This document shows, piece after piece, positions 3,901 through 61,800 of a stretch of 64,000 bases of DNA (position 1 is its first letter; every line of letters starts with the position of its first letter). Source of the DNA: Heteronotia binoei (Eukaryota). Below the pieces are notes generated by a model. The model worked only from the letters and a program-made list of their open reading frames with translations, made no database searches and was not told where the DNA came from. The stretch is taken from positions 47,616,001 to 47,680,000 of the forward strand of contig NC_083235.1 in NCBI RefSeq assembly GCF_032191835.1, in the 5' to 3' direction. The translations under genes and the position numbers were made by a program.

Positions 3901-6900
3901 TGAGTGGGGGGGGGGGTTGGTGAGAGTGGGTATGTGGGGTGGTAGTCTGCCAATTAAGGGACAGGGCTGGCAGGGGAGAGAGAAGCAGGGCCAGCGCATG
4001 GATTGGGAAGAAATTGGGCTGTCTTGTGCATATCACTGAGACGAAAGATATCTCATTCTTGGAAATGAGTGGAAAGCCAAAGGAAAAAAAGGGATGCTGC
4101 TATCGCTGCTGCACACTGGACAGCTGCAGAACTGAGAGGCAGAGTGAGTGTTAGGGGGTGGGGAATGGCAACCACCCTTCTCTTCTACACCTGATCTCAG
4201 CCCATGAAAGAGAAAAGGTAGTTGGAGGACAAAAAGCTCCCCTTGGAGTTTTAAATAACAATCTCTCCTTTAGGACTTCCTGCTTCAACAGAAAAAGCAG
4301 AATAGATGAGAACTGGTGGTGGGTGGCTCTGGGAGAGCCAGGTTCAGACACCCCTCCTCCTGAGTCAGGAACCTATTGTCTGGATCACCCAGGGTGGTTG
4401 TTCAACCTGGCCCACCTCACAATGTTGTTGTTGGGGATGGGGCTATGGAAGGAGGAGTCCAGTGTGCCTTCTTGAGATCCTCAGAGGTAGGAAGGGGGGA
4501 AGAGAGGAAACAAATAGTGAGAGATAGATTGTAGCCATGCTAGGCTGCTGGGGCTAAGCATATGGGGGGGGGGGGGATTTGCTGAAAAACTGCCTTATTT
4601 ATGTGGTGAGGAAGATGACTCATTTCCTAAAAGTGCTATATATACAAAAAGGAATTAATTTATTTGGAAATATTCCATCCCCTTTATGGTACCCATTGGA
4701 AAAAAATACATTTATTGGGTTTTTTTGTGTGGATTCCTCAGTAAATCAATTGCTTTCACTCCTAGGAAACTTGTTTGTATTTTGAGTAAAAATTCATATT
4801 GTTAACTGGGCTTGCCTATGTCCTTTATAAAGTTTATTTCTCCTGTACTTGGCATTACATTTTACAGCACACATGGCCTGGCCTGACAAAGTAAAATTTA
4901 TGTCAGATCCATAGGGCTGCCAAGCGCTTGCCGGGGGTGGGGGATGGCACTACTGAAATGGGGATCTTCTGCATTCATAGCATGTACTCTGCCATTAAAC
5001 TTTACTATCCTGCCACCATTCTATGTGGGTTGAGTAGGTACACACCTTCCTATCTGTGTCATGATACCTATCTGCACCCTGTTGAGCTGCTTGGCTATAT
5101 TTTTTGGTATAAATGGGGTCATGGGCATCTGAGGTTTCTAGTTATTACATGGGAATATGTGTTTACAACTAACTACAACTGGGTTGGCGTCAGAACCTAT
5201 GTTTGCTATATACTTTTCTTAAATGAGGCCCAGAAATGTACCAAAAGAAGGAACCTAAAACTCTGAAGCAAAAAACAGACTCAGAAACATCAATTTAGGA
5301 GCACATCCTGTAATTTGTGATTACATCTGATTAAAAGACACTGGTTTTTTTAAGTAAAATGGAAAAAAAATGTATTGAAAAAGAATCATTACCATACCTA
5401 ATCATTACACCTTTTTATTAGCAGGAGAGGACAATAATACAATTTTGTTCATCGTGCCACCTCTGCTATTGCTGCTTTTGGCATTATTTTTAGCAATTCT
5501 GTTGCTTATCCTTCCCCGGCGTAAAGCAAGTAAGTTTACTTTTGCCTGCCTGTGCTTCCACCAATACTTTTCCCCCAAACCATGTGCACCCTAGAAATTG
5601 AAAACAGAATATAGTTTTACTTTCAGCTTGTCAACTGAACATGAGCCCTATCCTTCCATATGTGCCAATATGCTGGCTGGGGGAAAATGAGTAACTATGA
5701 TTTATTCCCTGTGTTGTGTGAAAACCATTTACTACCATATAGGGTTGCCAAGTCCAATTTAAGAAATATCTGGGGACTTTGGGGGTGGAGCCAGGAGACA
5801 TTGGGGTGGAGCCAAGATCAAGGCTGTGACAAGCACAATTGAACTCCAAAGGAAGTTCTGGCCATCACATTTAAAAGGACAGCACACCTTTCCAATGCCT
5901 TCCTTCCATAGGAAGTAATGAAGGATAGGGGCACCTTCTTTTGGGGCACATAGAATTGGACCCCCTTGTCCAATCGTTTTGAAACTTGAGGAGTATTTTG
6001 GGGAGAGACACTAGATGCTGTACTGAAAATTTGGTGCCTCTACCTCAAAAAACAGCCCCCCCAGAGCCCCAGATACCCGCGGATCAATTCTCCATGATTT
6101 TCTATGGGAATAAATTTCCATAGGGAATAACAGAGTTCCCAGCAGACATTTCCCGGCCTCCCCTCCCCCTGCTTTCTGACGACCCTGAAGCGGGGGGAGG
6201 GCCTCCAAACCAGGGGATCCCCTGCTCCCACCTGGGGATTGGCAACCCTACTACCATACGGGAAGTGTTTAAAGGAGGGGGTGGTGTTCCCAAATGGGAT
6301 CATGGAGGAGCAAGGAATAACAGGAAAATTTCCCCCAGTCCAGTTTTTCCTCTCCTGAAGAGTATTCAACTATGAAATTCAGTGTTGGGAGGAACAAACT
6401 GGAGGCCTGCAAATAAACGGGGAGGAAAGGAAATAATATGGAGAACTTCAGCTGGCCAATTTCCCATATGATTCTCCATCTGCCTTTATTTCCACCTATT
6501 CTCTTTATCCAGTTCTTTCTAGAACTTACTCATTCCTCAGCAAGTTGCTTTAGGAGGCTTTGGGGGGGGGCTAATTTATACTATTTTCTGCATGACTCCA
6601 AAGACGCACAAATATGTGGAACCATACCTTGTCTGTAGGGTGCAGTGAGCTATAATGATATGGATATAATGATGCTATTGATTGAATGTTAGATACAGTT
6701 AAGAATATTTGCATTGATATTGTGTTAGGTCCAGTGAGGAAAGTGACTCAGCCATACGATTCACTATTATCACATGGGCAAACCATTACCAGACTACATT
6801 ATTTTCCCAATGATGTAGAGAGTATTAAAATGGAGACCAAAAACTCTAGGAACATGTTGAATTAATTGCCAGCCAGAGCTCATGTAAAGTCCCTACAATG

Positions 6901-9900
6901 AGATCACCAAAAAAATTACATATTTTTGACAATTCACCACACAGGTCGTAAACTACTTCATAAAGATTCTAGGGATATGCAACAAACAAGTACATGTTGG
7001 CAACATGATAGTAGAAAATAGATTTATGTTACAGGTAAAACTACAAGCAGTGGTTGCTTCTTAAAGGACATGTCAGGAAATCGTCATGGATTTAAATTCC
7101 AGTAACAATCTTAATATTTTTAATTTATGTGGGTAGCCACCACAAGCCAGAATAATGGCAGGCTTTTCTGTGTGGCGCTCTGTTCTTTCGTTCTGGCCTC
7201 ATACTTCTTTCTGCATTTTTTTTTTTAGCTGTAGCTTTTGTTTTTTTCCTATTTTTCTTCCTCCTGGTATTTTTGAGACCACTTTTACCTGTCTTTTTCT
7301 GGAAGCTGATTTTGAGTCACCTTTTTTATGTATGTTTCTTTGTTTTCTTTGTCCCACCTACACCTAATTGAAAACCTTCCAAGGGTATAATGCCATAGAG
7401 TCCACCTTCCAAGGCACCTTCCAAGGATATAATGCCATAGAGTCCACCTTCCAAGGCAGCCATTTTCTCCAGGGAAACTGATTTCTGTAGCCTGAAGATA
7501 AACAGGTTACTCACCTGTAATTGATGATCTTCGAGTGGTCATCTGTGCAGTCACACACATGGGTTTTCCTATCAGGACGAACCCTACCTCGGAGATTTTA
7601 AAAAGCTAGCCTAGGCGTTATTTTTGGCGCGCACTCCCTCTCGCTCTGGGGAGCAGGCATCCACTGCGCATGCCTGTAGCGCGAGGGAGGCGCCCAACCC
7701 ACTCAGTTTCTTTCCCCGCCGCTGACATAATAGGAGCGCGGATATATAAGACAAGTAGCCAGCAGCGGGGACGGCTGGGCGGGCGTGTGTGACTGCACAG
7801 ATGACCACTCGAAGATCATCAATTACAGGTGAGTAACCTGTTTATCTTCTTCGTGGTCTCTGTGCAGTCCCACACATGGGTGACTGATAAGCTGACCTGC
7901 AAGGCGGTGGGTGCTGGCACTAGAGTTGGAGGAAGAAATAGTGCAAAGGTTAGTGCAACATAGTCAGCACATTATAGGCTATAAGGTAAGTAACTACTCA
8001 CCAAGCCCGGACCAGCTTCTTAGTCAAAGATGGAGCGAAGAACTGCCTGTCCGAAGGATGCATCCCGCCTAGCACGAACGTCCAAAGCGTAGTGCATGGC
8101 GAAGGTCGAGGAGGAAGACCAAGCGGCAGCAGCGCAAATGTCCTCCATGGATACACCCCTGGCAAGGGCAGATGACGTTGACAGAGCTCTTGTAGAATGA
8201 GCTCTTATGGCAGATGGGACTGGTTGCTTCGCGAGTTTGTAGCACAGCTCTATAGCAGCAACCAACCATTTTGATAGTCTCTGTGTAGATATCTTTTTTC
8301 CCTTATGACGGCGGCCGTAGGCCACAAAAAGTCTGGAGTCTGTGCGGAACGATGCAGTTCTATCTATATAAAAGGCGAGTGCTCTTCTCACGTCTAGACA
8401 GTGTAGAGCTTCTTGGCCCTTATCCGTAGGCCGTTGGAAAAAAGCAGGTAAGGTAGTGGTTCTATGCAGATGGAATGCGGAGACCACCTTCGGTAAGAAA
8501 GCGGGATCTGGCCGTAACACCACCTTATCATGGTGAAACATGGTGTAAGGCGAGTCCGCTCTGAACGCGCAGAGATCACTTGCTCTTTTAGCAGAGGTGA
8601 GTGCAACTAAAAGTGCCGTTTTCCATGAGAGGAGGTGAAGTGGTATCGTAGCCATAGGTTCGAAAGGCGGTTTTACTAGTTGGCTAAGCACTAGTGACAA
8701 ACTCCAGCTAGGATACATTTGCCGCAGTGGTGGGTGCAAATGTAAGATTCCCCTTAAGAAGGATTTCGCAGCAGGGTGTGAGAAAACAGTTCGACCCTGT
8801 ACATGCGGGTGAAAAGCTGAGATTGCTGCCAGGTGCACCTTCAGAGAGGAGTACGTAAGGCCCTTTTCTGACAAATGCAGTGTATACGCTAAGATTTGAG
8901 GCATGGAAGCCGAGGAGGGGCTGAAATTATGCTTGGTAGCGTAGATGGAAAACCTTTTCCATTTCATGGAATATGACTTCCTTGTTGACGGTTTCCTTGC
9001 ATTAAGGAGAACGTGTCTTACTCCTTCAGGAAAGTCTGAGAGCATATCCTCCAGGCCGTTAGGCGAAGCCTGTTCGGGTCGTGGTGCAGAACCCTGCCGT
9101 TCTGCTGGGACAGGAGGTTGTGTGCCAGAGGGAAGTGATGGTAAGTGTTTTCTGACAGGAGGAGAAGGGTTGTGAACCATGGCTGGCGTGGCCACCATGG
9201 CGTCACTAGAATGCAATCTGTGTTGTCCAGTTGAATTTTCTGTATGCACCGTGTTATTAGCGGAAAGGGAGGGAAGAGGAAGTGTAGTGGACCGGTCCAC
9301 GTTTGTATGAAGGCATCCCCTGCAGACTGTTGTGAGGGCGGACCTCTCATAAAAAAGATCGCACACTGTGCATTGTCTGGTGCAGCAAACGCATCTATTG
9401 ACGGAGTTCCGAATTTCCGGAATACTGGCAGAAGGTATGACCGGTGGAGTGACCACTCGTGGTCGTTGATGGAATATCTGCTCAGTCTGTCCGCTTGAAT
9501 ATTCTGTACGCCAGGAAGATGTACCGCAGTGAGGTGGATCTGATGGGCAATACTCCAATGCCACAGGTGCATTGCTCTTTTGCAAAGGCGGGTGGATGCT
9601 GTCCCTCCTTGCCTGTTTATATAAAAAACCGTCGCCACATTGTCTGAGGCGATTTGTACGTGTAGGCCTTGAAGAGATGGAAGAAACGATTTTAACGCTC
9701 TGTGAACAGCTAGAAGCTCTAAGCAATTGATGTGGAGCGACTGTTCGTACGGTGTCCATTGCCCCTGGACCGTGAGTACGTCGAGATGAGCTCCCCAGCC
9801 CCATCTCGAGGCGTCTGTTGTAACCACTGCTGAGGGGCTTGGCCGTAAAAAGGGCATTCCCGCAAGCAGGTGAGCTCGAACTGTCCACCATTCGAGCGAA

Positions 9901-12900
9901 GGGAGGATGTGGTTTGGAACAGTGAAGACCGTTCCTTGAGATTGGTGTTGGGGTCGAAACGCGCGGACGAACCAGATTTGTAGGGTTCGCATGCGTAGTC
10001 TTGCGTGTGTCAGAACTGCCGTCGTGGCTGCCATAAGTCCTAACATGCGCTGAATGTTGAAGGCCGGTTGTTTGGGTTGTCGCATTATTTGTGTGGCCAG
10101 CGTCTGAATGGAGGATATCCTGTCCACAGGAAGATACGCCTTGTGGTCCGTGGTGCACAAACGAGCCCCAATAAACTGAATGTCTTGAGTTGGGGTAAGG
10201 TGTGACTTTTGATGATTGACCTGGAGGCCCAGGTTTGCTAGGAGCGCAAGTGTGATGGAAATGTCCTTCATCAACTGCGTCCTTGAGGCTCCCACAAGGA
10301 GCCAATCGTCTATGTATGGGTAGGTTGCAACGCCGCGTTGTCTGAGGTATGCTGCAATAACCGCCATACATTTCGTGAATGTCCGTGGTGCCGTGGAAAG
10401 TCCGAAGGGCAGAGCTCGGAACTGGTAGTGGTTGTTGCCAACGGCGAAGCGCAGAAACTTTCTGTGGCATTGGTGTATTGTCAGGTGGAAGTATGCGTCC
10501 TGTAAATCTACCAGTGCCATCCAGGAGTTTCTGGGGATTAAGGGCAGAATCGATTGTAAAGTGATCATTCTGAATTTTCTGTGGCGGATGAATTTGTTTA
10601 GGGCTCTTAGATCCAGAATCGGGCGCTGTCCCCCATCCCTTTTCGGGACTAGAAAGTACCTGGAATAAAAACCTGTCCGATGATACTGGACTGGGACAGG
10701 CTCTATAGCCGCTTTGGCTATTAAGGTGTCTATAAGAATCATGGGATTCCCGTGCCTGTTAGCCGCCCTGAGCCCGCCTGGCGGGGAGGGCGGGATATAA
10801 AAATAAAATATTATTATTATTATTATTATTATTATTTCTTCCTGAAGGGAAGGTGATGGGGGAGTGGAAACAAAATGATGTCTTTTTGGTGGTGCTTGAA
10901 ACTCTATGGAGTAGCCCCTCCAAATAATGTTCAGAACCCATTTGTCCGTGGTTATTTGCTGCCAATTGTCGAGAAATGGAAGAAGTCTGGAGACGTGCTG
11001 AATTGGTAGAGGTAGAAAGTCAAAGAGACTGCTTTGATGAAGATGCAGCCTTTTTAGGTGGTTGTGGTCTCTGCTGTCTCTGGTTAAAGGATTGCTTTGG
11101 AGGAGGAGCCTTACGTTTCCAGTATTCAGATTGTCGAGGGGATCTGGAACGTTTGAAGGGCGTTGGTTTCCATGATCTGGGCTTATAGCTCTGTTGTTGT
11201 TGTTGCTGTTGGGCTACCCCCAATCTTTTCGCTCGTTTGCGGCTGTCGTCCACGGTGGAGAGTATATCGTCCGTTGTGGCATTAAAGAGACCTTGTCCAT
11301 CGAAGGGAAGGTCTTCTATTTTGAATTTCAGATCGGGCTGCAACGAAGAGGATCGAAGCCAAGCGTGTCGTCTTAGGGCAATTGAGGCGGCCATCGCCTT
11401 GGAAGTGCACCCCACAGAGTGACGGATGGTGTTTATCTGTTGCTTTGAAATCCTGTTGAGCTCCTGAAGCAGCTTGCAGGCTTGTTTCTGGGAGGGCTCA
11501 GGCAGGGCAGAGACGAGCGTATTCAGTTGGGAGGAGATATTGTGGGAATACGCGGCGAAGTATGCTAGGTAATTGTTGATTTTGGCAGTTGCCGTCGAGA
11601 TTGAATACATTTTCCTTCCAAGAGTATCTAACTTCCTGCCTTCCTTCTCAGGGGGTACCGGGTGGCGGGTCTGTTTAGTTTTAGAAGATGAATGCACTAT
11701 CAGAGAATTCGGTGCTGGATGGCTAAATAAAAATTTCGAATCCGGTGCTTGGATCCTATAAAGGGATTCAATGCGTTTTGAAGTTGGGGGAATGGAGGCT
11801 GGGTTGTCCCAAGCTTCTTTGATGGCTTCTAGGTGTACCGGCAGCATCGGCAGAAAGGAACCAGCAGGTAAATCTGAGTGCACCAAGTCGTGTACCACGT
11901 CTGTCACCTTGGGTGCATCCGAAGTAAGAGTTACGTTAAGTGCAGAGGCCATATTGGCAATCAAGTCCAGGTATGTCTTTGCCCCTTCGGACGGTGACAA
12001 ATCCGCGGGCTTGGCGATATCCGAGGCGGGGGACCCAGGGGACATGGACTGTATCGAGTCCGATGATTGAGCGTCGGATTCAGCATCAGAGTCAGGTTCG
12101 GGTTCAGGTGGGTCCGGTCTGGTTGGAGTCGTGCTTTTGGGTTCCACTGGAATCGCACCTCTAGGTTTAGAAGTCGAAGTGGAAGGAGTCGGAGACGGCT
12201 GTTTCGGTAGTTGCTTGCTCCGTTGGACAGGAGTCGCTTCCTTGGATGGGTTCCTGTGATAATCGGTTCGGTACCGAGAATGGTGGTATCCGCAACATGC
12301 ATGGGATTCGATGGAAGGAGACCTTGAAGCATAATGGCGTCGCCTCGGGGACATGGATGGGGACCGAGATCTCGGGTTGTAGCGATGGCGGTCCCTCCCT
12401 CTACTAGGGGATCTCTCCGGGAAACGCGTATGATGGTACCGATATCTCTCTATGCTGGGGGACCTGGCTGGGAACCGATGCGCATCGAAGTACCTGTAAG
12501 CGTCATGTTTGTACTGGATGGGATTCGACATATCGCGGAACGATCTAGGATCGATGTGGTGTCGAGTCCACTGTTGCGGGTCTCGAATCGGCTCCAGAGC
12601 AGGGTCTAGCATGGATCCTTGCGGGGAAGGGGATCGGGACGGAATAGGAATAACTTCTTCCGTCTGTTGGTGCGGCGACTCCGTAGCCGGGGTGGTCACT
12701 TCCTGGGTGTCGGATCCGGGAGTGGAGGGCTCGCATTGCGATTCGGGCTCGTTCTGTTGTTCGGAAGATTTTCTCGAGTCCCTCGGAATCTTCGGGTCCT
12801 TCGGGTCTGTCGGTTTCCGCGGAGCCTTCGGATCGGACGGTTTTCTCGAATCCTTCTGGCCCTTCGGGTCGGAATGCTTATGTTTCTTAGTGTGCTTCCC

Positions 12901-15900
12901 GCCCTTTGGTTTAGTCGCCGCGGCCGTTTGTTCTGACGTTCTCGCGCCGTCGCCGGCTTTCGCGGCATCGCCGGACTTATGCTTGCTGGGAACAATGGCC
13001 ACTGAAGCTGCCGACCGTGCGCCGTCCCCTTGGGGAGTCAGTAGGGGGGGCGACTTACTTGCTGACGAAGATTGCGACATATCAGGCTGGAGCACAGACT
13101 CCATTAAGTGGCTTCTGAGTCTAGCGGCTCTGTTTTTGCGCGCCTGTTTGCAGAATTGAAGGCAATGCGCACAGGCGTCCACTTTATGGGATTCTCCCAA
13201 ACAGAACAAGCAAAGCGAATGCCCGTCCGATGTAGGGATTTTCGCCCTACAGCGCGAGCACCTTTTGAAGGTTATTTTACTGTCCCTTCCTTCCATACGC
13301 CCGGGGGGGGGGGGTGGGGGAAGGGAGGTCTGAGGAAAAGCGGGGAAGATATTTATCTAAATTTTTTTTTTTTTTTTTTGAAGATAAGAATATGAAGAAA
13401 TAGCGAAGGATGAAATAAGAGGAAACTTGAAGAAAACGGAGGCTAGATATCTGAGGTAAGTGAGGAGCGCAACGAGGTAGGACTATCCCGGGCGGCGGTT
13501 GGAAAGAAACTGAGTGGGTTGGGCGCCTCCCTCGCGCTACAGGCATGCGCAGTGGATGCCTGCTCCCCAGAGCGAGAGGGAGTGCGCGCCAAAAATAACG
13601 CCTAGGCTAGCTTTTTAAAATCTCCGAGGTAGGGTTCGTCCTGATAGGAAAACCCATGTGTGGGACTGCACAGAGACCACGAAGAAGATCAGTTATAATT
13701 CACCACTTGGAGGCTGGCATCTCTACCTATGAGGAATCCTGAGATTTCTCTTTAGAATATCAGTTCTACTACAAATATAATTCACCTTTCTTTTCCCCAC
13801 ATACAGCATGTGAAATAACAAACAGCAATAAACTATTGTGGATTATAAGAATGTATGAAGCAGCCTTATATTCAGTCAGTCTATTTAGCTCAGCAGTCAG
13901 CAGTCTACTCTGACTAACATGGACATTTCCCAGGTCTCATGGAGAAAGACTTTAGAATGTCTTCCCCTATAATAGCTACCTGAGATACTTTAACTGCAGA
14001 AAGGGAGGCAGTTTTTTGTTTCTGGGAACTATTTTCCTTTTTTTCAAGAGCTACCAGCCACAAGATCGCAGATTAGTGGGTGAAGCCAGTCACAAAATGG
14101 CAGCTGATAGAAAAATCATGTTTCAGAGCAGCTCTGCAGTGCTAAGGTGGGGAAAACTCTCCTCTGTGAGGCAAGCACATCACCATCCCAAAAGGTTACT
14201 TTCCTTGCAGGGGAAAGTTATACAATGTTTTTGTTGGACAAGGCGGATTGCAGAATTGATAAGGGGAGGGGGAGTCAACAGCATTCTCCTTTCCCATCCA
14301 GAGCAAGGGGTGTGCGTGTGCATGAATGAAGGAGGATTAAATGTGGAAAGGAACTGGTGCTGAAATTGTCATCTTCCCATCCAGAGTAAAGGTGTGTATG
14401 TGTGTCTGTGCATGCCACTTTTTACATGAAAAAAGGAGAAAAGCTGCCACAGTACTTTTAGAGGGAAGAAAAATAAAGGAATTACAGCAGCACTAAAGAA
14501 AGGCCAGAGGGCAATTATTGCTTGGGGATTTACTGGTCACTCCTGAATGACCATCTGCCCTTGCCCTACCCCTGCTCTGAAGAAGCCAGGGATTGAACAT
14601 AGTGCCTTCTGCATGCAAAGCACAATTGACAAGTCAATGCTCCTCCTGTGTAGCTACAAAATCACCAAGGGTAATGATTGCCACTTCCTCAGAAACTCCA
14701 TAATAAAGATGGTAAATCTTTAAAATTTTGCTTCCTCTTGCAGGAAATCTGAGAGACGTCCCACCCACTGTTAACCCAGCAAGTTACCCAGGCCCAGAAA
14801 ATGATGTGACTTATGCCGAGATTGGTAAATTCCAAGAGAATTACTCAATATGTCTTTGTACAGAGAACTGTCTGCAGAAATTAGTAATATCTGGGGAATA
14901 TTTCTGATTTGCAAAAGAAAGAAGTAGAGAAATCAACAGCTCTTGCCTTACAAATTTATGCCTTCATGCAATATAGGGAGAGGGTGTAAATCACTGGAAC
15001 ATTATACAGAAGTTCTGTCAGGAAATTACATAGGTGGAAAGCCCCTCTTGCTCAGCCAAGTCAAAAGCACTATTATTAATATTACAGAAAGCTAGAAGGA
15101 AACATTTTGTCTTAGGCACAGGGAACAGATGGTATTTGGAGAAGTGAATTATACATGCATCAGATACATAGTTTCTACCACAAGCTAAGTAAGAAAGCAA
15201 TGGATTAATATCTAGTGCAGCAATAAGGTCAGTGCAAGGACACACATATTGTGATTGTCAGCTCCCCCTACTGTGGTAGCCTAATATGCCCTCCCCTCTT
15301 GCTCCTTAGGAAGAGGTGACCCCCCTGGAAGATTTGGGGTGGGGGTCTTTTGGACTATCACAACAGGAGGGACCTGAGAAAGTAATGCCCCATGCATGTG
15401 AGTCCTTGCACTTGTGGAAACACTGTGCTGGATCCAACTCAATGTATGGGAGGTACTAGCACTCTTGGTATAATTATAGTCAAGGAGACTCTACAGGGTT
15501 TACAATAAAAACATATAGAATTCATATCAGTCTAACGGTGGTTCCCCAGACATTAGGGATTTCAAAACAATCTCTGCAGCAATTAACATTGAATCGGGAC
15601 ACTTAACAGTTTGATAGGCCATAGCAAGGAACTTGAGCAGAATGTAGATCACTTTCTAAGTATTCTGCCAGTAGCAATCAAAGGCAGTGCTAGAAAACTG
15701 GCTAAGACGACAAGATAAATAACAGGCTTATCAGAAAGGAGGGGAAAATTACAGTATGAAGATTTTTACATTATGATTCTTGTTTTTTTTACAGTATGAA
15801 GCTCAAGAACTGTAGAGGTCAGCGTTCTAGTTAGATCTGTAGCCCACCCTGTCTAAAGACTCAGGGTGGGCACCTTATGAGGCATGGCTATAGCAACACA

Positions 15901-23361: not shown

Positions 23362-32033
<8,672 letters not shown>

Positions 32034-32996: not shown

Positions 32997-33535
32997 TAGA
33001 GTTGCCAGGTCCAATTCAAGAAATATCTGGGGACTTTGGGGATGGAGCCAAGGAGACTTTGGGGGTGCAGCCAGGAGATATTGAGGGCGGAGCAAGTATG
33101 TTATGACAAGCATGATATTGCCGTTATGACAAGCATAACTCCAAAGGGAGTTCTGGCCATCACATTTAAAGGGACCGCACGCCTATTAAATGCCTTCCCT
33201 CCATTGAAAATAATGAAGGATTGGGGAACCTGCTTTTGGGGCGCATAGAATTGGACCCCCTGGTCCAATCCTTTTGAAACTTGGAGGCTGGTTTGAGGAG
33301 AGCCACGGAATGCTATGCTGCAAATTTGGTGCCTCTACCTAAAAAAAAACAGAGTCCCAGATACCTGTGGATCAATTCTCCATTATACCCAATGGGAATC
33401 GGTCTCCATAGGGAATAATGGAGTGCCCAGCAGACATTTCCCTCCCCCTGCCCCACTTTCTGATGACCCTGAAGCGGGGGGAGGGCCTCCAAACTGGGGG
33501 GATCTCCTATTCCCACCTGCGGATTGGCAACCCTA
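32997..33535. mobile_element. hAT MITE (same family as 5740-6250)
   Basis: TIR TAGAGTTGCCA...TGGCAACCCTA, perfect 8-bp TSD ATAGGATT, colinear with 5740-6250. Confidence 0.85.
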
Positions 33536-51059: not shown

Positions 51060-51496
51060 GAGCGCTGAGGTCAGCTGGGAAAAACCAGCTGAATATCCCT
51101 GGGCCAAGGGAGACCAGATTGAAGGCCACCCGAGACCGGGCCTTCTCTATTGCTGCTCCACTGCTGTGGAATCAACTCCCGGAGGAGGTGCGGGCCCTAC
51201 GATGCTTAGATCAATTCCGTAGGGCCTGTAAGACCCACCTCTTCAAAATAGCCTTCAACCAATGACAAACCGGGAAGTGCCATTGAAAATGCTCCTTATT
51301 TACTGAATTCTGCTGAAGACGTAACGCTTAGTACCATGTTGATATTGCTATTGTTAATTTTAATAATTGTAAATTGTTTTAACTGTGATTTTATAAGTAA
51401 ACTGATGTATAATGTATTTTATGTTGTAAGCCGCCCTGAGCCTGCCCCGGCGGGGAGGGCGGGATAGAAATAAAAAGTTATTATTATTATTATTAT
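51060..51496 (+). mobile_element. LINE2 3' end (ORF2 C-terminus, 3' UTR, (TTA)n tail)
   Basis: Encodes RAFSIAAPLLWNQLPEEVRALRCLDQFRRACKTHLFKIAF; tail gtaagccgccctgagcc...gggagggcgggata...(TTA)n. Confidence 0.85.
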
Positions 51497-58800: not shown

Positions 58801-61800
58801 TGTCTAATAGCCAGCAGAGGAAGGATGTTTTATACTGTTCAGCCTGTCTAGAAGACAAAATCTCAGATTCTGTATTTCTCCCTTAGGCTGTTAACAAAGA
58901 GGGCCATAGCAAAAAGGAATCAAAGCTACTAGTAGGAAGGAGTTGACTGATAACCAATGAGACTGTGGGCCTACGATGTAGGCATCCTATACATTTATCA
59001 TAAATACACATGTATAAATAAAACCGGCTTGTTTGGAGTCATGTTTTTATATCCTAAAAATTATTATTTGGTTCTTGGAGTCATTCAGTTATATACTTGA
59101 TGGGCAATAGTGGATTAAATATTAAGAATGGCTGATCTCAGGTGACTATCAACTTAGCACTGGACCCTCTTAGTTAATGGGCAGAGCAATCCTGAGTTAC
59201 ATCTACCTTTGGGTGCCCAGCCACCACAGAACTCAGGTGCCGCTAGCCAACTGCCTAAAGGCTAAGTTACGCTGAGGTGGAGGAGGGGAGAAAGCATAGC
59301 TGCTGTAGTGTGGCCTCCTGGTGTACTGTCAAGGCAGGGGTAGCAGGAGGGGCGGGGCACTTTGGATCAATGGGATTGGCCAGTCCTGGTGAAGGTGCCA
59401 TTGCACATGACAGTTGGGGGCAGAGAGATGCAGCTCTGGAGAGCCCAATCACCTCTCTCACCGCGCCCCCTGACCGAGATCCAGGTCAATGACAGGCACA
59501 TGGTCAAAGTAATCTGCTTTCCCTGTATGACAGCATGTTCCATGGGTAAGCTCCTGGTGAATACTTTGAGTCCGCCCCCTACCTTGGCTCCCCCAACACT
59601 GACTCAGAGAATCCTTGTGAATCAATGCCACCCCCTTCTATGTGCTCAGAGGTCCTGCCCCCTGGGTGCAAGGGGAACCCTGTCCTGGAGCAGACACAGA
59701 GTGAGGAGCCTCAGCCATGCATTCATTCCATTAGTGACTCCCCCATGCCCGTTGCATCTTTCCCCTCTCCTCCGTCCCATGCGCATGGCAACCCTGGGAG
59801 GTCGGTCAGGCTAAGGGAATGCATCTGTCCTAAAGCCAGCTCCCTAGATCCCATGGTACATGTGGGGAACAGACTTACCACACCTCTAAGCCTCTGTTGA
59901 ATCTCCACCTGCAAGACAGTGAAACAGATCTATGATAACTGTTCAGGAGTTCCATTGCCAGCCTCAGTCACAGATGTTCTGTCCTGACAGGGTTGGCAAA
60001 GGCAGCCCCAGGGTGAGGTTGCCACAAATCCCCCCACCCCCCGGGAGGCACATGATAGAACCAGCCAACTCACACTCACCTGTCCTGGGTTGAAGTGCTC
60101 CTGGATTCATCAGCTGATGCAGCTGCAGCCCAAGGCTGTGTTTTAGCAAGGGAATTATTTGCTGAGCTGGATCACCACAGAAACAGAGCAGCTGCCAGAC
60201 CTGTTCCCCCCAGACTCATCCTGTGCCCTGCCAAGGTTGGGAACCAGGCAAGGGACTTACCATCTCACAGAAAACTTCTTGGGGAGGTTTTCCCATGGCA
60301 TGTAGAGGCTGTGGCAATGAGGGGCCATGGTTTGTGCTGCCCGTCGCCTATATATATGTGTGTGTGTATATATATATATATACACACACACAAACCACAC
60401 ACTGTGGCTCTGCTCCATATCAAGCAAGTTTAGGGTGCTTTCCCATGCTTGCCTGTCCCTGCATGAGTGCCAATGTACATTGAGCCACCATATTTGTTGG
60501 GATTCTGAAATGGGAGAAGTTAGCCACAGAATATAGACCTTTCTCTCCTCCTTGCATGTCAAAATGCTTGCCCTGTAGTACTAAGTGCCCTCTCTGCATC
60601 ATCCACCACTCAAGTGCCTCGCCCCTTGCTCTAAGTCTGCATGGCAGGGAACTCCCTCCTCGCAGATTACACTGTTAGTCAGTGTTATTGGGTTTAGTCT
60701 TGTGACTATTTCATTGTGAATGCTGAATTTAAACACTGTCCTGTTGCCAGCAAACAGTAGGTAGTGGCATAATGAGCATAAGGAGGGAGTGTTCCTGCCA
60801 AAACCTTTAATGCCTATTTGCTCTAACCTACAAAGTTTTATGATTACTGTGGACATCTAAAACAAATAATGTAATAATGACGACTACAACTGCGGACAAC
60901 TAGGGGATTACTCAACTTTAAGGCTGATGATGAAGAAATAGATATTGTTCAAGTGCCTGTGTTGTGAGCCGCCCTGAGCCTGCTTCGGCGGGGAGGGTGG
61001 GATACAAATTAAATATTATTATTATTTTCTACTCCTTGGCTCCATCTTTAACCATTAGGGGGACTGCAACTAAGAAATCGGAAGGATGCCATTTTGCATG
61101 AGAATCAACATACCTGTTAACTTACCCAACAGATGGGGTGACACAGCACAAACCTCCCTTACATTTAAAAGTGAGCACTGTCTATACTTGCAGATCAATT
61201 TTCATGTTTTGGTGAAATTTACATCAACTTAATAAACCCCTGTGGTATTATTTAGTTCTTCTGTTATCACTGAAAAAGGAGGTAAAGGAAGAGTGTGGGA
61301 TAATAGAAAGAGTTTGGACTTATTTATAACTTGCCCTATGAACTCGGTTACAGCATGTTTATCAAAAACAATAGATGGATCACTTTTTCTAAGGGATCCA
61401 TAATGTATGGAAATAATATAATGTTCTTCAGGAAACAAGGGAGAACTAAAATAATCCTATAAATTATAATTTTTGTAAAGACTTTATAGAATTTCAGAGT
61501 CAAGTAGGTCTTCATGGATTTCCAATATTGCTGTTATCACAAATGCCAAAGCTGCATAAGAGTAATCACTGGGATTCATCAAGCAATCAATAGGAGTCTT
61601 GTGGCACCTTAAAGACTAACAGTTGTTTATTCCAACATAAACTTTTGTGGATTAGCACCCACTTCCCCAGATGTGAAGATGTATTCTAGAATAAAATTGT
61701 GTTGGTCTTTAAGAGATGGTTACAACTCTTGCTTGTTTTTGCTGTAACAGACTTGACACAACTACTCCTCTGGAATGTTTAGGTGGGTAGTATTTCATTG

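What the first reader, a model, noticed from the sequence alone, without database searches (positions are those of the whole stretch)
7480..13725. Exact empty site: DIRS integrated by crossover in a shared GAAGAT hexamer inside a hAT MITE
Seen: left ...tctgtagcct|GAAGAT|aaacagg, right ...ccacgaa|GAAGAT|cagttataattc. The ICR, which mirrors the circle junction, has the two halves overlapping exactly at ATCTTC. Removing the element restores ...ctgtagcctGAAGATcagttataattc..., a continuous piece of a TAGGGTTGCCA-type MITE. Inference: the YR recombined a circle whose junction core matches a 6-bp target core, as in site-specific recombination rather than a staggered-cut TSD. The family may prefer this motif, which an abundant MITE would supply as a landing pad.
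Basis: partly seen in the sequence, partly recalled or inferred. Interest (0 to 1): 0.75.

Follow-up and report, generated by a model that had tools for sequence, protein, structure and literature searches.

The report
DIRS retrotransposon integrated at matching hexamer
A young, intact DIRS-type jumping gene in a gecko genome sits in a decayed small transposon, flanked on both sides by the same six letters that mark its internal copy of the circle junction; this illustrates the published integration model for these elements and is not a new mechanism.

Summary
The sequence observation is correct to the base. A 6,196-bp DIRS1-like retrotransposon lies on the minus strand at 7494-13689. GAAGAT forms both of its outermost hexamers. 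The two halves of its internal complementary region (ICR) overlap by exactly that hexamer, at 7844-7849.

The element looks young and intact. It has open gag, pol and a Cre-like tyrosine recombinase with all catalytic residues.

Both flanks resemble TAGGGTTGCCA-type hAT MITEs in the same window. Joined, they align colinearly to one MITE relative, so the rebuilt empty site is plausible, though it rests on few and diverged relatives.

Only the 6-bp overlap is unusual, against 2-4 bp in 28 published elements. For one copy this is weak evidence: a 3-bp core plus chance matches gives 6 bp or more about 5% of the time.

The MITE landing-pad idea has no support. GAAGAT occurs about once per 1.3 kb outside the element, and the MITE relatives here carry other letters at that position.

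The scan had not noted this elsewhere.

The parts
7494..13689 (-). Full-length DIRS1-like retrotransposon, 6,196 bp, counted with both terminal hexamers
   Evidence: ITR and ICR geometry; RT and RNase H domains; open gag, pol and YR frames
7494..7499 (+). GAAGAT at the window-left junction, which is the element's 3' end
13684..13689 (+). GAAGAT at the window-right junction, which is the element's 5' end and also the outermost six bases of the divergent left ITR
7494..7526 (-). Right extension (rE), complementary only to the ICR; together with the adjacent bases to 7541 it folds as a small hairpin
   Evidence: the fold of 7494-7541 has z -2.8
7527..7541 (-). Divergent part of the right ITR; starts with ATCTTC, the inverted counterpart of the hexamer at 13684-13689
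7542..7715 (-). Conserved right ITR arm
   Evidence: 174 nt, 99% complementary to 13501-13674
13501..13674 (-). Conserved left ITR arm
7785..7881 (-). Internal complementary region: 7785-7849 pairs with the 3' terminus, 7844-7881 pairs with the 5' terminus
   Evidence: both halves 100% complementary to their termini
7844..7849 (+). ATCTTC, the six-base overlap of the two ICR halves; mirrors the circle-junction core
11020..13296 (-). gag ORF (758 aa from the ATG; the open frame is 11023-13356)
9021..11213 (-). pol open frame (RT, RNase H, weak Dam-like methyltransferase); motifs YIDD, TTDAS, ADRLSR, LFPP
8023..10758 (-). Tyrosine recombinase open frame; the catalytic part is 8023-9021, with R146, K178, H275, R278, W301, Y311
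   Evidence: the family profile hits Cre at E 5e-8
7374..7493 (+). Left flank: internal module of a decayed hAT-type MITE, including a 42-bp tandem duplication at 7374-7457
13690..13725 (+). Right flank: terminal module of the same MITE, ending in a decayed TIR

Best explanation
A recently active DIRS1-like retrotransposon integrated into a decayed hAT MITE. Its own Cre-like tyrosine recombinase probably did this by one reciprocal crossover. The partners were the junction of a circular DNA copy, whose junction sequence is mirrored in the ICR, and a GAAGAT already present in the target.

Because the exchange fell inside six shared bases, the hexamer now stands at both ends. No target site duplication was made, and deleting the element with one hexamer restores the target.

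Shown: the geometry of termini, ICR and hexamers; the intact recombinase; the MITE-like nature of both flanks. Inferred: the circular intermediate, the recombinase as the agent, and the presence of the hexamer in the target before insertion.

How many of the six bases the enzyme needs (3 to 6) is not settled by this one copy.
For: - The termini and ICR halves are 100% complementary and overlap by exactly the hexamer. The flanks diverge from the ICR immediately outside it.
- The single mismatch between the two ITR arms lies in the ICR-covered part, and each ICR half mirrors its own terminus. This fits ICR-templated ends.
- The recombinase frame is open and carries the full R-K-H-R-W-Y set. Its family profile matches Cre in both domains.
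- The target held six bases at this position. The MITE relative at 28311-28394 aligns across the junction with GAACTC opposite the hexamer. A 7-bp inverted repeat, 7474-7480 with 13688-13694, spans the right junction, and the restored site folds as a hairpin (2.2% of shuffles fold as well).
- The published model says exactly this, for a 3-bp core (PMC3266345; PMC7192593).
Against: - There is only one copy, so neither a required core length nor any preference can be shown.
- I found no convincing inverted binding arms around the core, in either the junction or the target (my own reading of the sequences).
- Work in Dictyostelium found mostly linear single-stranded cDNA and no PCR product across a circle junction (PMC7192593), so the circle remains a model.
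- The MITE evidence rests on diverged relatives, with gaps close to the junction.
Confidence: 0.7

Rival explanations
1. The canonical 3-bp core applies. Only three of the six bases mattered, and the other three matched the target by chance.
For: The published annotation of 28 DIRS1-like elements gives ICR overlaps of 2-4 bp, mostly 3. Chance extension from a 3-bp core to 6 or more has P about 0.05, or about 0.017 for any one fixed trinucleotide. That is small but not negligible for an observation picked out after the fact.
Against: Six of six on both sides is still the less likely outcome under this model. The closest solved relative, Cre, exchanges strands across a 6-bp stagger (established knowledge of loxP), so a longer core is mechanistically natural.
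Confidence: 0.25
2. A linear cDNA carrying the hexamer at both ends was joined to a chromosomal break at or near GAAGAT by host microhomology-mediated repair, without recombinase strand exchange. The terminal redundancy would come from each end being copied from the ICR.
For: Dictyostelium DIRS-1 makes mainly linear single-stranded cDNA that is integration-competent (PMC7192593). The sequence outcome would be identical.
Against: The recombinase is intact and conserved, which argues that it is used. The same paper reports that transformed cDNA conferred resistance in the rrpC- mutant but not in wild-type cells, and the authors attribute this to the element's proteins being available only in the mutant.
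Confidence: 0.08
3. The target had no hexamer. The element arrived with GAAGAT on both ends, or made a 6-bp staggered-cut duplication that matches the ICR by coincidence.
For: None specific. It cannot be formally excluded without a true empty site.
Against: A coincidental duplication matching the ICR has P about 1 in 4096. The MITE relative has six aligned bases at this position, and an inverted repeat spans the hexamer and right-flank boundary. DIRS elements encode no DDE integrase or endonuclease.
Confidence: 0.03

Closest known systems
DIRS1-like retrotransposons (DIRS order), e.g. AcDIRS1 and AcDIRS2 of Anolis carolinensis and XtDIRS3 of Xenopus, as annotated by Piednoël et al. 2011
   Same: Three overlapping ORFs (gag; pol with RT, RNase H and methyltransferase; tyrosine recombinase with the HSTR motif). 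Inverted terminal repeats with a divergent outer part. A right extension. An ICR whose halves mirror the two termini. No target site duplication. Size about 6 kb.
   Different: The ICR halves overlap by 6 bp here, against 2-4 bp in the 28 published annotations. The proteins are at most 52-56% identical to anything in the protein collection, so this is an undescribed gecko family.
Cre/loxP and other phage-type tyrosine recombinase systems
   Same: The recombinase profile matches Cre in both the core-binding and the catalytic domain, with the same catalytic residues and spacing. The exchange falls within a short stretch identical in both partners. Cre cleaves 6 bp apart (established knowledge).
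   Different: There are no evident 13-bp inverted binding arms around the core. The target is an ordinary genomic hexamer, not a dedicated site.
Cryptons (tyrosine recombinase DNA transposons)
   Same: They are flanked by 4-6 bp direct repeats read as microhomology between the element and the target, not as duplications (PMC13465315).
   Different: Cryptons have no reverse transcriptase, ITRs or ICR.

Membership tests
DIRS1-like retrotransposon | Reverse transcriptase and RNase H of the Ty3-related type | tested here: met
   RVT_1 at E 1e-22 and RT_RNaseH at E 4e-6, both above Pfam cut-offs. Motifs YIDD, TTDAS and ADRLSR.
DIRS1-like retrotransposon | Tyrosine recombinase in place of an integrase | tested here: met
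   Single-sequence Pfam hits are below cut-off. But 80 homologues exist, some named Tyr recombinase domain proteins. R146, K178, H275, R278, W301 and Y311 are conserved. The family profile hits Cre at E 5e-8.
DIRS1-like retrotransposon | Methyltransferase domain after RNase H | tested here: inconclusive
   Dam PF05869 at E 0.005, 16.9 bits, below the cut-off of 28.1. The LFPP motif is present. Several homologues carry PF05869.
DIRS1-like retrotransposon | Inverted terminal repeats | tested here: met
   Arms of 174 nt, 99% complementary.
DIRS1-like retrotransposon | ICR near the 3' end, complementary to the start of the left terminus and the end of the right terminus | tested here: met
   38 nt and 65 nt, both 100% complementary.
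DIRS1-like retrotransposon | A 3-bp circular junction shared by both ends | tested here: not met
   The overlap is 6 bp in this copy. Published values are 2-4 bp. The feature is descriptive, so I still file the element in the superfamily.
hAT-type MITE with TAGGGTTGCCA termini | Terminal inverted repeat of that type | tested here: inconclusive
   Only one end is present, at 13702-13725. It matches 17 of 24 bases of the TIR of the 6250 copy (my own count on the sequences printed). Its best in-window hit is the MITE terminus at 32997.
hAT-type MITE with TAGGGTTGCCA termini | 8-bp target site duplication | tested here: inconclusive
   Met for two in-window relatives: CTACCATA around 5740-6250 and ATAGGATT around 32997-33535. 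For the copy hit by the DIRS, the other end is missing, and CCTATGAG occurs only at 13726.
Site-specific recombination of the Cre or lambda type | Identical crossover core in both partners | tested here: met
   Six of six bases at both junctions and in the ICR, for one event only.
Site-specific recombination of the Cre or lambda type | Inverted recombinase-binding arms flanking the core in both partners | tested here: not met
   By my own base-by-base comparison of the sequences read (no script or tool run), 5 of 13 positions match between the junction arms, and similarity between the target and the junction outside the core is at chance level.

The most novel reading that the evidence does not exclude
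This gecko DIRS family may really use a six-base crossover core, like the 6-bp stagger of its nearest solved relative Cre, and not the three bases quoted for DIRS elements. Its insertion sites would then be predictable from the ICR alone. The palindrome of an abundant MITE, which carries GGAGAT/GAAGAT-like letters, could be a recurrent target.
Probability: 0.3. Interest if true: 0.5.

Novelty: new member of a known kind. Interest (0 to 1): 0.3.

Why it matters
DIRS integration has never been reconstituted, and the evidence for the circle-plus-short-identity model is entirely comparative. A young copy with perfect termini, a perfect ICR and a reconstructable target is a clean textbook example. 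It also supplies a concrete substrate pair for an in vitro test: junction against target.

If the six-base identity held across the family, it would lengthen the accepted core and bring DIRS recombinases into line with Cre-type enzymes. On present evidence it is one well-resolved instance of the known model.

Tried and rejected
- Other copies in the window: none. BLAST of the element against the rest of the window gave only three hits to a roughly 70-bp repeat segment.
- Protein word searches gave no relative above 52% (RT) or 56% (recombinase) identity. The family is therefore absent from that collection.
- Eighty DIRS-bearing metagenome contigs were fetched and scanned for termini, ICR and flanks. 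Only about four had both ends, and their junctions were degenerate or truncated, so no distribution of overlap lengths could be made.
- Exact-pattern scans for the element's terminal motif and for the MITE module in viral and prokaryote genome collections were empty.
- The scan's own notes hold nothing on GAAGAT or on DIRS flanks.
- A paper search for the MITE terminus returned only unrelated titles among those listed.
- The recombinase alone has no PDB sequence hit; only the family profile does.
- I recall a squamate MITE consensus that carries GGAGAT at this position inside a 10-bp palindrome arm. That is memory, not a tool result, and I did not use it as evidence.
Full report
**What is there**

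The stretch 7494-13689 is a 6,196-bp DIRS1-like retrotransposon on the minus strand. It has:
- Conserved inverted terminal repeat arms at 7542-7715 and 13501-13674 (174 nt, 99% complementary).
- An internal complementary region (ICR) at 7785-7881.
- Three overlapping open frames in element orientation: gag (window 11023-13356); pol (9021-11213), with RVT_1 and RT_RNaseH above the Pfam cut-offs, the motifs YIDD, TTDAS, ADRLSR and LFPP, and a weak Dam-like hit; and the recombinase frame (8023-10758), with the HSTR motif.

On its own the recombinase scores below the Pfam cut-offs and has no PDB sequence hit. However, 80 homologues exist in reptiles, turtles, amphibians and coelacanth. Their alignment shows R146, K178, H275, R278, W301 and Y311 conserved. 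The family profile matches Cre recombinase in both domains at E about 5e-8.

Nothing in the frames is broken. The termini are 100% identical to the ICR, so the copy is young. Notes of this scan name the genome as a gecko, Heteronotia binoei in one note. I did not check that.

**The observation**

It holds to the base.
- GAAGAT stands at 7494-7499 and at 13684-13689.
- 7494-7558 is perfectly complementary to 7785-7849, and 13652-13689 to 7844-7881. The two ICR halves therefore share exactly 7844-7849, ATCTTC.
- The flank bases next to the hexamers do not continue the ICR match on either side.

One added detail: the hexamer at 13684-13689 is also the outermost part of the divergent ITR. Its inverted counterpart, ATCTTC at 7527-7532, lies inside the other terminus. 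The 33 nt outside that (7494-7526) are a right extension in the sense of Piednoël et al. The terminal 48 nt, 7494-7541, fold as a small hairpin.

The single mismatch between the ITR arms (A or C in the motif at 7542-7564) is mirrored in the matching ICR half. This is what ICR-templated regeneration of the termini predicts.

**Is it more than chance?**

With no homology requirement, an overlap of six or more has P about 0.001. With a true core of three bases and chance matches on either side, P is about 0.05. With four bases it is 0.16, and with five it is 0.44. The hexamer is thus good evidence for homology-guided insertion, but only weak evidence that all six bases are needed.

**The target**

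- The right flank ends at 13725 in a decayed terminal inverted repeat. By my own count on the sequences printed it matches 17 of 24 bases of the terminus of the copy ending at 6250 (the script's own comparison in that call was offset by one base). Its best hit anywhere else in the window is the terminus of the MITE at 32997 (z about 5.8).
- The left flank's best hits lie inside the MITE at 27960-28539 (z about 8.7 and 4.7).
- The joined flanks, keeping one hexamer, align colinearly across the junction to 28311-28394 (z 7.3). GAACTC stands opposite the hexamer there.
- A 7-bp inverted repeat (7474-7480 with 13688-13694) spans the hexamer and right-flank boundary. The restored site folds as a hairpin better than 98% of shuffles.
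- Two relatives with TAGGGTTGCCA termini have 8-bp duplications, CTACCATA and ATAGGATT, as hAT elements do.

I therefore accept that the target was a decayed hAT-type MITE that already held six bases at this point. The support comes from few and diverged relatives. The copy's other end is missing, and no close copy of this module is in the window.

**Mechanism and what is already known**

Piednoël et al. 2011 (PMC3266345) describe the two ICRs as overlapping on a 3-bp circular junction. [quoted passage not shown] Malicki et al. 2020 (PMC7192593) restate this and show that the ICR is essential. They also found mainly linear single-stranded cDNA and no PCR product across a circle junction.

The difference is length. 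In the supplementary annotation of 28 elements, the ICR halves overlap by 2-4 bases, mostly 3; here they overlap by 6. Cryptons, another recombinase-bearing class, show 4-6 bp repeats read as microhomology (PMC13465315). Cre, the nearest solved relative, cleaves 6 bp apart (established knowledge). A six-base core would thus be unsurprising mechanistically, but one copy does not demonstrate it.

**The landing-pad idea**

GAAGAT or its complement occurs 43 times in the 57.8 kb outside the element, about once per 1.3 kb. No MITE is needed to supply it. The MITE relatives in the window carry other letters at the equivalent position and no DIRS. Unchecked notes of this scan place other DIRS copies of this genome in unique intronic DNA. 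One insertion in a common repeat says nothing about preference.

**What could not be done**

The test that would settle the question needs the flanks of other copies of this family. That was out of reach:
- The window has no second copy.
- The protein collection holds nothing closer than 52-56% identity.
- Pattern scans were empty.
- Metagenome DIRS contigs almost never carry both ends with flanks.

No contig looked human.

**Verdict**

The two extensions, a six-base core and a MITE landing pad, are respectively open and unsupported.

Noticed in passing
window 10757-10829: A roughly 70-bp segment inside the DIRS, in the open pol frame, is 86-90% identical to three other places in the window: 28107-28176, 51425-51496 and 60963-61026. 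This looks like a SINE or LINE tail piece. Another first-stage note reads it as an in-frame LINE2 tail.
   Followed up: partly
window 7374-7457: An exact-register 42-bp tandem duplication (98% identical) inside the MITE remnant, just left of the DIRS.
   Followed up: no
window 27960-28539: A MITE bounded by TAGGGTTGCCA and CAGGGTTGCCA. It carries the flank-like module twice in opposite orientations (28311-28394 and 28404-28473) plus an inserted repeat tail. It has no matching 8-bp duplication, so it may be two elements or a rearranged one.
   Followed up: partly
window 7494-7541 and 7800-7849: The right extension and its ICR mirror contain a small palindrome (ACAGGT, five bases, ACCTGT). On the plus strand of the ICR there is a consensus 5' splice-site string (CAGGTGAGT). 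Other notes of the scan discuss splice-like signals around DIRS ICRs.
   Followed up: no
window 7542-7564, 7785-7807, 7859-7881, 13652-13674: A 23-nt motif is present four times: in both ITRs and in both ICR halves. This is the short block that Piednoël et al. describe as conserved at the boundary of divergent and conserved ITR.
   Followed up: partly
window 13300-13380: Long G and T homopolymer runs in the element's 5' untranslated region, between the left ITR and the gag start.
   Followed up: no
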